The notes under the pieces were generated by a model. It made no database searches, was not told the DNA's origin, and worked only from the letters and a program-made list of their open reading frames with translations. From contig CM075989.1 in assembly GCA_038087875.1 (NCBI GenBank), forward strand, positions 13,144,001 through 13,208,000: a DNA stretch of 64,000 bases, read 5' to 3'. The stretch's first letter is position 1, and each line of letters opens with the position of its first letter. A program made the translations under genes and the position numbers. Shown piece after piece: positions 22,166 to 60,329 of the stretch. This stretch comes from Malacoraja senta. Taxonomy: Eukaryota.

Positions 22166-22990
22166 ATATTAACGATTTAGATGAAGGAATTAAATGTAAC
22201 ATCTCCAAATTTGTGGATGACACAAAGGTGGGTGGCACTGAGCTGCGAGGAGGATGCTATGAAGCTGCAGGGTGACGGCTAGGTTGGCTGAGTGGGCAGA
22301 TCCATGGCAGATGCAATATGATGTGGATAAATGTGAGGTTATCCGCTTTAGTGGCGAGAATAAGAAGGCAGATTATTATCTGAATGTTGTCAAATTTGGA
22401 AAAGGGGAGGTGCAATGAGACCTGGGTGTCCTTGTACATCAGTCACTGAAATTATGTATTCGGGTACAGCAGGCAGTGAAGAAAGCAAATGGCATGTTTG
22501 CCTTCATAGCGAGAGGATTTGAGTATAGGAGCAAGTAGGTCCTACAGTGGGTGTACTGGGCCCTGGTGAGACCACGCCTGGAGTATTGTGTACAGTTTTG
22601 GTATCCTAATTTGAGGATGGACATTCTTGCTATTGCGGGACTGCGGCGCAGGTTCACCAGGATGGCGGGACTGACATATGATGAAAGAATGGATCGACTG
22701 GTCTTATATTCACTGGAATTTAGAAGGGTGAGAGGGGATCTTATAGATACATATGAAATTATTAAGGGATTGGACAGGCTAGATGCAGGATTTTTTTTTC
22801 CAATGTTGGGGGAGGCCAGAACCAGGGGTCACAGTTTAAGAATAAGGGGTAGGTCATTTAGGATTGAGATGAGGAAAAATGTTTTCACACATAGAGTTAC
22901 GAATCTGTGGAATTCTCTGCCACAGAAGGCAGTGGAGGCCAATTCACTGTATAGGCCGAATGGCCTATTCCTGCACCTATTTTCTATGCC
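22166..22990 (+). mobile_element. CR1 (HER1-like) LINE, 5'-truncated RT 3' end
   Basis: INDL...KF(V)DDTK, LVRPRLEYCVQFW, SLEFRRVRGDLI, RTRGHSL, FFTHRV motifs; ggccgaatggcct tail. Confidence 0.9.
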
Positions 22991-23484
22991 TATATTTCTA
23001 TGTACAATTAGTAGGAATGTTACAACATTTTGAGATTTTAAAAATCAAGCCTGTAATTTATCCCATCAGATAAAGCATGAAAAGAACTTTAATTTGCTAC
23101 CTAATTCACTTTCATATATTCAGTATTAAAAAAGTTATGGTCATTTTCATACTCAGAAATTAGCATCTAGTTCCCTATTGCTTTTCCATTGACGTTCCCT
23201 ATTGCTTTTCCATTGACTTAACACAAAAGCTGTGATCGAGGATAGTCAAAAGCCCATAACTTTCTTAAAAATTAAGAGAACTGAATGAAATTTTCAGTTA
23301 TTATCGATTGAAGCATTCTGAAACAAATATGAAACATCTTACTTGGATGACCTGAAATTAAAGCATATAATTAGTTAGCTAATTACAAAATTGACCGTTG
23401 TGACGGAAATAGTAATAACACCGAGACTGCCTTGAAAATTCAAAAATGTGATGTTCTCAAGATCAGAACTTTAATATTATTGTA

Positions 23485-23859
23485 TTATATGCTGTAAGTC
23501 CATAACAGACAGGGAAAGAAATTACAATTTCTAGCAAAAGACCATAAGTCTTTATGGAGAAGATCAGTTGCTAGCTGGTACATTGGCATATCATAATCAG
23601 TAGCATCATCATGCTCTTCAGATTGTAACCAATAAGCAACTCTGTACACCTTGTTTTTCCTCAACTTTTCAATTTTGGCATTGTAAACCACAAGTTTTTG
23701 CTCTTCAAACTGCGCATGACATGCCTTTCTGCCCACTACTTTCTCATTAAGAATGTCCTGTAGATCATCACATTTGGAGTAGTCCAAATTCGGATAATCT
23801 CTGCGAATGCTGTCTAAATCAGTCTCTTTTGCTGGGCATTTGGATTGACAATTTTGCAT
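23485..23859 (-). pseudogene. Transposon-borne ORF remnant with Spindlin-like Tudor domain
   Basis: VVGRKACH...YRVAYW...MYQLATDLLHKDL resembles the recalled Spin/Ssty repeat pattern (IGKAVEH...FYITY...MYQLLDDYKEGDL). Confidence 0.5.
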
Positions 23860-24770
23860 TTCTTCTTCGGAGACATATGTTTAAAATGTAAAGCAAAAAA
23901 AAAAAACACTGAACAGCATTGACACAAACAAGTTATTATTTGCAGTTTTAGGAAAAAAAGGTAGAAATGCTAAAGTTAAACGCTAAAACAAATAGTAAAT
24001 ACCCAGCAAAAAAAATCATATTCATCAGTTTCATCAAATAAATTAAATTCATCTAATCTATTAAATTCATCTAAATTCAATTACTGGATCTAAACATCTA
24101 TTCATTTCTTAACAAAAGGCTAAATTTTTTAAATAGCCTAAGTATCCAAATAACAAACTGCTCCCATTCACACAATAATTCACTATATAACATGATTTTT
24201 AAATCTCACTTTGTCCTGAATTTATATGCCAAATTTCACTCAAGATAATCAAAGTAATTATTTTTTGCACAATACATCTGACTAAAACTGTACTGTGGAT
24301 ATTTAGTATGGAAATATTGATCATGGATAGACAATAACACAAAATATGGATGATTTAGATGTTCTTATGACATTGTGCATTGATTATCTTGAGAGTGGAT
24401 GTTTCTGGAATGTGATCGATTGGAATGTTGCTGTTGCCATAAATTTTAAGCCCATATTGGCAGGCAAGACACGGCCGATTCGTATGGGGCATAAATAACA
24501 TTTTTGCATCATAAGATTATAATGAAGCCACACCAAAAAGCAAGGTAATATGTTAAATAAACGATATACCTTTTGTTTTGTCCTGATATTGCGATCCGTG
24601 ATGTTGAAGGCGTTAGAAGTCGCATTTTACTTCAATCAAGCGATTAAATCGTCCAGCAATTTTTTTAAAAATAAACCGGGAACGGATGTGCGAACGATTT
24701 TTCTTCATCAGCTGGCAGCCCGAGGAAATCCCTCTCAGACAACCAATACAAACCTGCATTTTAATCCCGT

Positions 24771-24828
24771 CCACCCCTCCACCCCTCCACCCCTCCACCC
24801 CTCCACCCCTCCACCCCTCCACCCCTCC
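24771..24828. repeat. (CCACCCCT)7 tandem repeat
   Basis: Perfect 8-bp unit x7; GGGG tracts on the minus strand. Confidence 0.95.
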
Positions 24829-24829
24829 G

Positions 24830-25580
24830 GAGTCGCACGCACCGACAGTGACAGATCTACAGCGCCGCTAATGGTAGGTTTTGTAACGACGCCACAATTA
24901 GCATTCTACCTACGCTTGGACTGCCGGCCCCGCCCGCTTTACCGCCGCAGTCCAAGCACGTGCCACGGAGGGCGGAGACTGACTCACGCACGCAACGCTC
25001 CGCCCAGGGCAGCGGTCACGTGTGAACGCTGCCTCTCCGGCTCCACCCATCTCCACGCGACTGTCACATGACGGCTGTTGGCGGCCGCGGTGCTCGAGCG
25101 TCAGTCGGAGACTCTCCATTATGAAAGCGGTGGCTGCCGCGGGCCTGGCACTCTGCACCACCCGGGACTCTCCCGCGCTGTCTGCCCTCACACCACGTCG
25201 ATGGCTCAGTGCCACGTGGAGCCACTGCTGCAGCCTCCTCACCCGTGAAGAGAATGGTAGGTGGCTCGGGGTGCGTCAATTGCTGGGCCATTCGACCTGG
25301 CCGCGTGGTGAGGCCTGCTGTGCACCGGGCGTAGGCCCGTCGGCGGGGACACGCTGTGCGCTTGAGCTGTATCGGCCGCTGCAACTGCCGGTAACGGTGG
25401 CCGCGGTACCGTGGGGTAGGCCTGGCTTGGTGCCTGGTCTGGGCCTACACTGACTCGGAGGCCGCGGCTCGGGTGCCGAACCTGCCAGTGAATGTCGATC
25501 AGTAACCATGACGCCTGCTGATCTAGTCGCTCAATGCTGTTTGGAGTGCCTGTGGTTGACAGCGCTAGTGCGCCGAGGCC
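24830..25580 (+). promoter_or_regulatory. TRPM7: CpG island / TRPM7 promoter and exon 1
   Basis: High GC and CpG density with GC boxes (ccccgcccg, gggcgg) around the ATG|gt first exon. Confidence 0.8.
25254..25256 (+). CDS. TRPM7: TRPM7 exon 1 coding part (initiator ATG only)
   Basis: gaagagaATG|gtaggt in the CpG island; phase 0 joins exon 2 to give MSQKSWIE; mammalian TRPM7 exon 1 also contributes only the ATG. Confidence 0.75.
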
Positions 25581-56345: not shown

Positions 56346-56520
56346 GTTCATTGGCTATATTTAAGAGGGAGTTAGATGTGGCCCTTGTGGCTAAAGGGAT
56401 CAGGGGGTATGGAGAGAAGGCAGGTACGGGATACTGAGTTGGATGATCAGCCATGATCATATTGAATGGCGGTGCAGGCTCGAAGGGCCGAATGGCCTAC
56501 TCCTGCACCTATTTCTATGT
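56346..56520 (+). mobile_element. CR1 LINE 3' tail abutting the gap
   Basis: gatcagccatgatcatattgaatggcggtgcaggctcgaagggccgaatggcctactcctgc. Confidence 0.8.
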
Positions 56521-57422
56521 ATCTATCCATGTAGGATAGGCCATTCAGCCCCTCAAGCCTGTTCCTCTTCAACATTTTGGCCAATCTTCTAATCAGCTCT
56601 ACCCTGATCTTCACTCTCACCCTCGGATGAGGAGAACCAAAGATTTACAAACTGTGGAGAAAGTTCTGATCTGAAAGTCACAGCAGTCTGTTTCTGGAAG
56701 GTGGAGGTGGGCTTTGCTGAGCTTTGCCATCTAAGGTTGGGATGGACATTGTGTGAGTTGCATAATGGAGGTGATTTTTCTGTTCCCATTGCACTAAAGG
56801 TCGCCATTGTTCATTCACTCTGTGCGCCCATCAGCTTCATTGTGATTTTACTTTCCTTGCATGGGCGACATCACAGTGCAGTATAATTCTACTTTCAGTA
56901 AACGTGGCCATTGCCACAGGGTTTGCTGGGACTGTGAGGAATCTAGAGTCCAATCCCACCCTCTACCCAGGATCTCGACCCCAATTATCCTGTCTGTCTG
57001 CTCCTGACTTAAACTGACCATCTGGCTTTGCTGGTCCGTGCAGCTCGTGAGCTGCCAGCCACTGTTGCATCTCTTGAACCGTCCCATCAATGCAAACTCG
57101 GCAGCGGCCCTGAGCTTTGCCCAGCCAGACGTTGCTCTTGCGGCTTTTTGCTCCGTGATGGGGACTGACTGATGGCTCATTGCAGCGATGAGGACAAAGT
57201 CCTGCCGGACTCTCTATTCTAATCCAAGGGTGCTCTGCATCGTCACATACTCGTCCTTCCCACATAATGCCAAACGCAGGCACTGCCTGCTCTCTCCCAG
57301 GTCAATGCCAGTGCTTCGTTCTCAAGGAGAACTATTCCTCTCATCCTGGTTAATATTTCACAAACTGAACATCTGTAAAGCAGACAATTTCTCACTTTGT
57401 ACATTTCAAACATGCGTCGTGA

Positions 57423-60192: not shown

Positions 60193-60329
60193 AAGTCAAG
60201 GGATATGGGGAGAAGGCAGGAACGGGGTATTGATTGTGGATGATCAGCCATCTGACACGAAGGGCCGAATGGCCTACTCCTGCACCTATTGTCTATTGTT
60301 TATTGTCTATGACTGATTTTATACTAAAA

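What the first reader, a model, noticed from the sequence alone, without database searches (positions are those of the whole stretch)
23011..24900. DNA transposon carrying a Spindlin (Spin/Ssty)-like reader domain, inserted against the TRPM7 promoter
Seen: a ~1.9-kb segment with imperfect TIRs (GTAGGAATGTTACAA / GTGGCGTCGTTACAA) and an AATTA direct repeat. It contains a 124-aa minus-strand ORF whose residues ~41-105 read VVGRKACHAQFEE...VVYNAKI...VYRVAYW...DYDMPMYQLATDLLHKDL. Known (recalled): the second SPIN1 Tudor-like repeat reads roughly IGKAVEHMFE...EWRGMV...FYITYE...LYMYQLLDDYKEGDL and binds H3K4me3 through an aromatic cage. Inference: this is a remnant of a transposase C-terminal Spin-like domain. 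The element ends where the TRPM7 CpG island begins, so the family may target H3K4me3-marked promoters, and such transposons could bear on the origin of vertebrate Spindlin genes. One insertion is only suggestive.
Basis: partly seen in the sequence, partly recalled or inferred. Interest (0 to 1): 0.78.

Follow-up and report, generated by a model that had tools for sequence, protein, structure and literature searches.

The report
Dead hAT-like transposon with Tudor tail
This stretch is a dead, internally deleted copy of a cut-and-paste jumping gene. Its enzyme, in intact relatives across animals, ends in a small domain shaped like a Spindlin histone-mark reader; whether that domain steers insertions to promoters such as TRPM7's is untested.

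Summary
Window 23012-24894 is a 1.88-kb non-autonomous DNA transposon on the minus strand.

- **Ends:** the 3' end carries a terminal motif (TAGGNATGTNNCAA) shared by relatives in chiton, limpet, priapulid and an unnamed sample. The 5' end is degenerate. The flanking direct repeat is 7-8 bp (ACAATTAG), not 5 bp.
- **Deletion:** the first 15 transposase codons (ATG at 23876) are joined out of frame to the last ~96 codons (23545-23832). The 124-aa ORF is therefore a chimera with a lost stop.
- **Intact relatives:** these are ~900-1000 aa and multi-copy, from sponges to fish. Their core folds like the Hermes/Ac hAT transposases.
- **C-terminal domain:** 52 of 56 near-full-length proteins end in this domain. 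Its model (pLDDT 91) is closest to the second Tudor-like repeat of Spindlin (Z 6.3-7.4). A family profile hits mainly Spindlins in the PDB, weakly. Pfam's Spin-Ssty model does not match.
- **This copy:** it has lost conserved residues, including W41 (now Q).

Promoter targeting rests on one insertion 360 bp upstream of the TRPM7 start codon, and a link to Spindlin's origin was not tested.

The scan noted this same family four times on other DNA of this genome.

The parts
23004..23011 (.). Left copy of the target-site duplication: ACAATTAG (7-bp CAATTAG if the element ends T...A).
   Evidence: Read directly from the sequence. The same 8-mer occurs at 24894-24901.
23012..23025 (-). 3' terminal inverted repeat of the element, TAGGAATGTTACAA.
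   Evidence: It matches the family terminal motif TAGG-N-ATGT-NN-CAA, found at both ends of chiton L003, chiton L002, Patella L007 and Priapulus L008, and at the 5' end of L005.
23026..23544 (-). 3' untranslated and subterminal region. It includes a perfect 24-bp tandem duplication at 23170-23217.
   Evidence: There are 522 bp between the stop-equivalent position and the terminus. Relatives have 469 bp (L002), 528 bp (L008) and 988 bp (L007). The tandem duplication was found.
23545..23832 (-). Decayed coding remnant of the C-terminal Spindlin-like Tudor domain. It corresponds to residues ~875-970 of a ~973-aa transposase.
   Evidence: tblastn gives 65-76% identity to P0001, P0002, P0004 and P0152, and nothing else of the transposase survives in the window. 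The AF2 model has pLDDT 91. The top 21 VIA-align entries are all Spindlins, Z 6.3-7.4. Near-invariant W41 is Q here and Y74 is H.
23832..23876 (-). First 15 codons of the transposase (MSPKKKCKIVNPNAQ, ATG at 23876-23874). The internal-deletion junction lies at about 23829-23831.
   Evidence: The translation matches N-termini of full-length relatives, for example MPPKKRRLVNPAAQPG in P0157 and MPGGKKRKLVNPAAEPG in P0195. Weak blastn matches fall on the ORF starts of L002, L004 and L006. These codons are out of frame with the Tudor remnant.
23485..23859 (-). It is a chimeric frame: an out-of-frame N-terminal piece, then the Tudor remnant, then read-through past the lost stop.
23877..24880 (-). 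5' non-coding region of the element. Its last ~300 bp are GC- and CpG-rich and contain a (CCCCTCCA) repeat at 24766-24828.
   Evidence: The first 300 bp from the 5' end have GC 0.52 and CpG o/e 1.06. Relatives show the same: L002 0.45/0.94, L003 0.48/0.93, L005 0.47/1.18. The repeat was found.
24881..24894 (-). Degenerate 5' terminal inverted repeat. Its reverse complement reads TGGCGTCGTTACAA.
   Evidence: It is a 9/14 in-register match to the 3' terminus and sits immediately beside the duplicated CAATTAG.
24894..24901 (.). Right copy of the target-site duplication, ACAATTAG. Base 24894 may instead be the last base of the element.

Best explanation
**What it is.** Window 23012-24894 (minus strand) is a dead, non-autonomous copy of a divergent hAT-superfamily cut-and-paste transposon. 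An internal deletion of about 2.6 kb removed codons ~16-874. Both ends survive, together with the 5' leader, the first 15 codons, the last ~96 codons and the 3' tail. The copy encodes nothing functional.

**Where it sits.** It lies head-to-head with TRPM7. Its 5' end is 360 bp upstream of the TRPM7 start codon, and a CR1-like LINE tail lies on its other side.

**The intact enzyme.** In relatives the transposase is ~900-1000 aa. It has a basic N-terminus, a coiled coil, a Hermes-like DDE/CxxH catalytic core, a basic linker and a C-terminal single Tudor-type barrel. That barrel is most like Spindlin's second repeat and carries conserved aromatic residues.

**Inferred, not shown (about 40%).** The tail may tether the transposase to methylated histone tails, with H3K4me3 the leading candidate by analogy with Spindlin. 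That would bias integration towards active promoters.
For: **Element anatomy**
- The terminal motif is conserved in six elements from five sources.
- The flanking duplication plus in-register inverted repeat has p of about 0.004.
- N-terminal codons at 23876 are joined out of frame to the tail.
- No other transposase remnant exists in the window.

**Family**
- 148 clusters at 50% identity.
- 118 long relatives, many per genome in Hydra, plus molluscs, priapulid, brachiopod, annelid, urchin, sponge and fish.

**Catalytic core**
- AF2 model pLDDT 92.
- The top 12 PDB hits are all Hermes transposase, E 3.6e-6 to 2.3e-4, followed by P element transposase.
- The top 30 Swiss-Prot models are all hAT transposases or hAT-derived genes.
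- Atlas structural matches to hAT families give TM 0.66-0.75.
- D35, D112, C137/H140 and E394 are conserved.

**Tail**
- 52 of 56 near-full-length proteins carry it at the extreme C-terminus, after a 24-30 aa linker in most.
- The family profile against the PDB returns 24 hits at E up to 10, most of them Spindlins including the top 15, best E 0.0065.
- The top 21 VIA-align entries are all Spindlins on residues ~123-190, Z 6.3-7.4, against 5.0 for the next fold.
- Mouse Ssty1 is the highest-probability Swiss-Prot match, 0.94, rmsd 2.7 A.
- Six of 74 members match Pfam PTM_DIR17_Tudor and others match Agenet or BAHCC1 Tudor.
- Aromatics at W41, Y50, Y67, W68 and Y80 are 90-100% conserved.
Against: - No Pfam hAT model matches the full-length proteins, and sequence profiles find no solved transposase.
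- Pfam Spin-Ssty does not match.
- Foldseek E-values for the small domain are all above 0.09. VIA Z-scores below 8 can reflect a common arrangement only.
- A flanking duplication was seen in only 2 of 5 complete elements, and it is 7 bp in L003 rather than the hAT-typical 8 bp.
- The 5' terminus in the window is poor: the outermost 7 bases mostly differ.
- Cage geometry and ligand were not examined.
- Only one insertion was seen, so nothing here measures target preference.
Confidence: 0.85

Rival explanations
1. The element is as described, but its place beside the TRPM7 promoter says nothing about the Tudor tail. The position reflects either the general preference of hAT-type transposases for open, nucleosome-poor gene 5' ends, or plain chance and tolerance of insertions just upstream of a promoter.
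For: Only one copy lies in the 64-kb window. A CR1-like LINE tail ends at the same spot, so this upstream zone accepts insertions of unrelated elements. Established knowledge, not tested here: Ac/Ds, Tol2, Hermes and P elements favour 5' regions or nucleosome-free DNA without any Tudor domain.
Against: The tail is kept in 52 of 56 near-full-length transposases across phyla, with conserved aromatics. That argues it does something for the transposon, and chromatin tethering is the commonest role of such barrels.
Confidence: 0.55
2. The Tudor-like tail does not read histone lysine methylation. It may bind something else, such as methyl-arginine proteins as SMN/TDRD Tudors do, a host repair or import factor, or DNA. 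Alternatively it may help assemble the transposase oligomer.
For: The fold lists include SMN, SPF30, TDRD3, SETDB1, PHF20, MSL3 and Agenet domains, which have varied ligands. The best Pfam matches are PTM_DIR17_Tudor, not Spin-Ssty. There is a single repeat, whereas Spindlin uses three packed repeats.
Against: The closest structures by a clear margin are Spindlin's second repeat, which holds H3K4me3 (per the titles of the matched entries). The profile-to-PDB hits are mainly Spindlins.
Confidence: 0.35
3. The 124-aa ORF is a host exon or a domesticated reader gene upstream of TRPM7, not transposon debris.
For: It is an uninterrupted 124-codon frame lying beside a CpG island.
Against: Its start is an out-of-frame reading of transposase N-terminal codons. 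The ancestral stop is lost and 19 unrelated residues follow. Near-invariant G30, W41, G52 and Y74 are replaced. It sits between the element's own termini.
Confidence: 0.03

Closest known systems
hAT superfamily transposons (Hermes, Ac, hobo, Tol2) and hAT-derived genes (ZBED, FAM200, ZMYM1, GTF2IRD2)
   Same: The catalytic core folds like these proteins: an RNase-H-like fold with a large helical insertion and a C-terminal helical region. D, D, E and CxxH are conserved. The terminal inverted repeats are short, about 14 bp, and begin TAGG. The window copy has an 8-bp flanking repeat. It is a non-autonomous deletion derivative.
   Different: No Pfam hAT, BED or DUF659 model matches by sequence. 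There is no BED finger. The N-terminal region and the long coiled coil are novel. A C-terminal Tudor-type barrel is added. The duplication is 7 bp in one relative and unseen in three.
Spindlin / Spin-Ssty family (SPIN1-4, Ssty1)
   Same: They are the best structural match, on SPIN1 residues ~123-190 (second repeat), including the helix after the barrel. They are the main profile hits in the PDB. The shared pattern is VG-x-x-I-x-H-x-W/F ... Y/W-x-G ... Y-x-[IV]-x-Y ... L-x-x-D-x-x-x-G-D-L.
   Different: There is one repeat, not three. The Pfam Spin-Ssty model does not match. Sequence identity is 16-21%. The domain is attached to a transposase. Ligand binding is untested.
RAG1/RAG2 recombinase (Transib/ProtoRAG-derived), in which the RAG2 PHD finger reads H3K4me3
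   Same: From established knowledge, this is a transposase-type DDE enzyme coupled to a reader of an active-promoter histone mark that directs where DNA is cut and joined. It is the working model proposed here.
   Different: Its function has been shown experimentally, whereas here it is only inferred.
Chromoviruses (Ty3/gypsy retrotransposons with a chromodomain at the integrase C-terminus)
   Same: From established knowledge, a Royal-family methyl-lysine reader is fused to the C-terminus of the integrating enzyme and biases target choice.
   Different: These are retroelement integrases, not cut-and-paste transposases.
Pfam PTM_DIR17_Tudor (PF21743) and Agenet or BAHCC1-like Tudor domains
   Same: These are the only Pfam models that match family members: 6, 4 and 2 of 74, with best E 5e-6.
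   Different: Only a minority of members match. The window copy matches none. In the structural ranking, Agenet and canonical Tudor domains score below Spindlins (Z 4.0-5.0 against 6.3-7.4).

Membership tests
hAT superfamily transposase | RNase-H-like DDE core with a helical insertion domain, folding like Hermes or Ac | tested here: met
   The AF2 model of P0152 residues 385-850 has pLDDT 92. The top 12 PDB hits are Hermes, E 3.6e-6 to 2.3e-4. The top 30 Swiss-Prot hits are all hAT or hAT-derived. Atlas gives TM 0.66-0.75 to hAT families.
hAT superfamily transposase | Conserved catalytic D, D, E with a C/DxxH motif after the second D | tested here: met
   In the 71-sequence core alignment, D35 and D112 are at least 90% conserved, and C137, H140 and E394 are invariant. 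Assigning these as the catalytic residues is an inference from motif order, not from superposition.
hAT superfamily transposase | 8-bp target-site duplication | tested here: inconclusive
   The window has an 8-bp ACAATTAG repeat, or 7 bp if the element ends in A. Chiton L003 has a 7-bp CATTGTC repeat. No flanking repeat was seen in L002, L007 or L008.
hAT superfamily transposase | Short terminal inverted repeats (hAT consensus YARNG at the tip) | tested here: met
   Termini of about 14 bp, TAGG-N-ATGT-NN-CAA, occur in six elements. TAGGN fits YARN but not always the fifth G.
hAT superfamily transposase | Match to Pfam hAT models (Dimer_Tnp_hAT, DUF659, DUF4371, zf-BED) | tested here: not met
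   Ten long members gave no Pfam family at E up to 0.01. Kinship is visible only by fold.
Spin/Ssty (Spindlin) family | Match to Pfam PF02513 Spin-Ssty | tested here: not met
   The ORF has no Pfam hit at E up to 10. Spin-Ssty is not among the 25 families most matched by the 74 members.
Spin/Ssty (Spindlin) family | Tudor-like beta-barrel plus following helix, superposable on a Spindlin repeat | tested here: met
   The top 21 VIA-align entries are all Spindlin-1/2B/3/4: Z 6.3-7.4, rmsd 1.9-4.1 A over 60-69 residues. The next fold scores Z 5.0. Ssty1 has probability 0.94.
Spin/Ssty (Spindlin) family | Significant sequence-profile similarity to Spindlins | tested here: inconclusive
   With the family HMM against the PDB, most hits (including the top 15) are Spindlins. 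The best whole-sequence E is 0.0065 and single-repeat E is about 1.
Spin/Ssty (Spindlin) family | Three tandem repeats packed together | tested here: not met
   There is a single repeat of about 70 residues at the C-terminus.
Spin/Ssty (Spindlin) family | Aromatic cage that binds methyl-lysine (H3K4me3) | not testable with these tools
   Aromatics at W41, Y50, Y67, W68 and Y80 are 90-100% conserved. The window copy has Q at position 41.
Non-autonomous (internally deleted) DNA transposon | Both termini retained, flanking duplication present, coding region interrupted by a deletion that joins distant parts of the transposase gene | tested here: met

The most novel reading that the evidence does not exclude
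A pan-metazoan clade of hAT-like DNA transposons carries its own Spindlin-type methyl-histone reader and uses it to land at H3K4me3-marked promoters. The single-repeat transposon domain and the three-repeat vertebrate Spindlins share a direct common origin, by capture in one direction or the other.
Probability: 0.15. Interest if true: 0.85.

Novelty: new variant of a known kind. Interest (0 to 1): 0.6.

Why it matters
Known cases where a mobile element reads chromatin marks to choose its target are few: chromodomain integrases, host tethers such as LEDGF for HIV, and the RAG2 PHD finger. In the full-text library searched I found no report of a cut-and-paste DNA transposase with a built-in Tudor or Spindlin-type reader.

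If the tail does read a promoter mark, three things follow:
- The family would be a natural model for chromatin-guided transposition.
- It could be a starting point for targeted integration tools.
- It would be a new data point on how reader domains move between hosts and transposons.

For this locus the practical message is smaller. The ~1.9 kb just upstream of the skate TRPM7 promoter is transposon debris, including ~300 bp of CpG-rich DNA and a G/C-rich microsatellite. The 124-aa ORF is not a gene.

Tried and rejected
- **Direct Pfam and PDB searches of the 124-aa ORF:** no Pfam family at E up to 10, and only one chance PDB hit.
- **Pfam on ten long relatives:** nothing.
- **Sequence profiles of the full-length protein and of the core against the PDB:** only coiled-coil noise, or nothing.
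- **The repeat finder on the region:** it did not pick up the terminal repeat pair because the right arm is too degenerate.
- **Fetching contigs of the closest relatives (P0002, P0156, P0161):** no DNA was available. The termini of the skate's nearest subfamily therefore could not be compared.
- **Scleropages locus L004 and JGI locus L006:** no recognisable termini.
- **Comparison of the two chiton copies:** no shared flanks or boundaries, because they are diverged subfamilies.
- **Non-coding similarity between the window element and relatives:** none beyond the ORF start and the tail.
- **Rejected readings:** chance ORF; host exon; 5-bp duplication; the element's CpG-rich end being a spill-over of the TRPM7 island. 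On the last point, relatives have the same CpG-rich 5' end.
- **A Mutator link:** PF20700 ORFs lie about 800 bp downstream of P0002 in its contig. I treated these as a neighbouring element, because the core folds as hAT.
Full report
**What is in the sequence**

The ORF on its own matches no Pfam family, even at E up to 10, and no relevant solved structure.

**The ORF is real transposase debris**

An exhaustive HMMER search found 148 protein clusters with E down to 3.5e-35. In nearly all of them the match ends within a few residues of the C-terminus.

Long members are 860-990 aa. They include annotated 'uncharacterized' proteins of a chiton, a crinoid and a whelk.

A second search found 118 long relatives:
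- many separate loci in Hydra
- limpets, periwinkle and Biomphalaria
- Priapulus, Lingula, Capitella and Lytechinus
- a sponge
- the fishes Misgurnus, Scleropages and Oryzias

Many of the full-length ORFs lie uninterrupted on contigs of about 3-7 kb. This is the profile of a transposable element, not of a host gene family.

**Only the tail survives here**

tblastn of twelve relatives against the whole window finds residues ~875-970 at 23545-23832, with 65-76% identity to the closest four, and nothing else.

Just upstream on the minus strand, an ATG at 23876 opens MSPKKKCKIVNPNAQ. This is the family's N-terminus; compare MPPKKRRLVNPAAQPG and MPGGKKRKLVNPAAEPG. Weak DNA matches also fall exactly on the ORF starts of three relatives.

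These 15 codons are joined, out of frame, to codon ~875 at about 23829-23831. The copy is therefore an internal-deletion derivative.
- an out-of-frame start within the N-terminal codons
- the tail
- 19 residues of read-through, because the ancestral stop after ...GDLxFC is gone

Near-invariant G30, W41, G52 and Y74 are replaced.

**Termini**

The motif TAGG-N-ATGT-NN-CAA then proved to flank the ORF, in inverted orientation, in two chiton copies, a Patella copy and a Priapulus copy. It also lies upstream of the ORF in a fifth contig.

The window's left end (23012-23025) is a good copy of this motif. It lies 522 bp beyond the stop-equivalent position, compared with 469-988 bp in relatives.

The right end (24881-24894) is degenerate: only 9 of 14 bases match. 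It is in register, however, and abuts the only CAATTAG within 10 kb. That combination arose in 0.37% of random sequences.

The duplication is ACAATTAG (8 bp), or 7 bp if the terminal A belongs to the element. Chiton L003 has a clean 7-bp duplication. Three other complete elements show none, and I cannot explain that.

**What kind of transposase**

No sequence model recognises the core. The fold is clear all the same:
- A 71-sequence alignment gave a pLDDT-92 model.
- Its top 12 PDB matches are Hermes transposase. P element transposase comes next.
- Its top 30 Swiss-Prot matches are Ac transposase and hAT-derived genes.
- The ESM Atlas independently gave TM 0.66-0.75 to DUF659, DUF4371 and Dimer_Tnp_hAT clusters.
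- Conserved D35, D112, C137-x-x-H140 and E394 fit the hAT catalytic signature. The residue assignment is inferred.

**The C-terminal domain**

In 52 of 56 near-full-length proteins the domain sits at the very C-terminus, after a 24-30 aa linker in most of them.

A 74-sequence alignment gave a pLDDT-91 model with two helices, four strands and a final helix.

| Test | Result |
|---|---|
| Family profile against the PDB | 24 hits at E up to 10, most of them Spindlins including the top 15; best E 0.0065 |
| Foldseek against the PDB | No E-value better than about 0.1. The list is dominated by Royal-family barrels; Spindlin-1 has the best TM-score and the highest probability among them |
| Foldseek against Swiss-Prot | Mouse Ssty1 has the highest probability, 0.94 |
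| VIA-align | Top 21 entries all Spindlin-1/2B/3/4 on residues ~123-190; Z 6.3-7.4, against 5.0 for SETDB1 and about 4 for SMN-type Tudors |
| Pfam on 74 members | PTM_DIR17_Tudor matches 6, Agenet 4, BAHCC1 Tudor 2; Spin-Ssty is not listed |
| Protein-language-model neighbours | Spin/Ssty, Agenet, SAWADEE and Tudor clusters, all at weak scores |

My reading is a Royal-family Tudor barrel whose nearest known shape is Spindlin's second repeat. Specific membership of Spin/Ssty is not shown.

Aromatics at W41, Y50, Y67, W68 and Y80 are 90-100% conserved. That is compatible with a methyl-lysine cage, but I could not check the geometry.

**Setting**

The window carries TRPM7:
- Exon 2 at about 51.4 kb translates to [27 protein letters not shown]. 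I recognise this from memory as the TRPM7 N-terminus.
- The start codon is at 25254-25256, so the element's 5' end lies 360 bp upstream of it.

CpG o/e is already about 1 from roughly 24400. The first 300 bp of the element's 5' end are the most GC- and CpG-rich part in the window copy and in three relatives. Part of the apparent island is therefore the element's own leader.

On the other side, the target site directly follows the 3' tail of a CR1-like LINE.

**What is shown and what is inferred**

Shown:
- the element, its ends and its internal deletion
- the family and its breadth
- the hAT-like fold of the core
- the Spindlin-like fold of the tail

Inferred:
- that the tail reads a histone mark
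- that the mark is H3K4me3
- that this steers insertion

One insertion near one promoter is what any hAT element might do, so it adds almost no weight.

**Prior notes and literature**

The scan had already noted the same family four times on other DNA of this genome, with the same reading. I reached the reading from my own searches before seeing those notes, and I tested it independently.

Five full-text literature searches found no description of a hAT or other DNA transposase with a Tudor or Spindlin domain. Repbase and subscription journals were not searchable.

Noticed in passing
window 22551-23003 (also 56486-56533 and 60263-60296): The 3' end of a CR1-like LINE: a reverse-transcriptase C-terminal ORF and a tail ending in TTCTATG-type repeats. 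It stops exactly at the transposon's target site. Two more copies of the tail lie elsewhere in the window.
   Followed up: partly
window 24766-24828: About eight tandem copies of CCCCTCCA (G-rich on the minus strand, so possible G-quadruplex or i-motif DNA). They lie inside the transposon's 5' leader, about 430-490 bp upstream of the TRPM7 start codon.
   Followed up: no
window 23170-23217: A perfect 24-bp tandem duplication (GTTCCCTATTGCTTTTCCATTGAC, two copies) in the element's 3' subterminal region. It could be a subterminal transposase-binding repeat or a slippage event.
   Followed up: no
L002 7918-10550 (chiton Liolophura, CM072726.1): The 973-aa transposase gene model is split at residue 639/640 by 2.6 kb that is annotated as an intron. 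This is probably a nested insertion. A pogo-like DDE_1 gene lies upstream of both chiton copies, L002 and L003.
   Followed up: no
P0190 (Scleropages), P0231 (Oryzias sinensis), P0216, P0241 (Hydra): Four of the 56 near-full-length family proteins lack the Tudor-like tail. Two of these are fish proteins. They may be truncated copies or candidates for domestication.
   Followed up: no
Atlas clusters: Clusters with the same ~970-1000-aa architecture are labelled mostly Basidiomycota or Porifera. A fungal presence would mean either a much wider range or contamination.
   Followed up: no
L002, L007, L008 element flanks: Three elements have clean terminal repeats, and two of them (L007, L008) have uninterrupted ORFs, yet none shows a flanking duplication. 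The window copy and L003 do show one.
   Followed up: partly
ENA contig of P0002: Two ORFs matching Pfam Mutator (PF20700) lie about 800 bp downstream of a tail-bearing ORF on the same strand. This is probably a neighbouring element. No DNA could be fetched.
   Followed up: no
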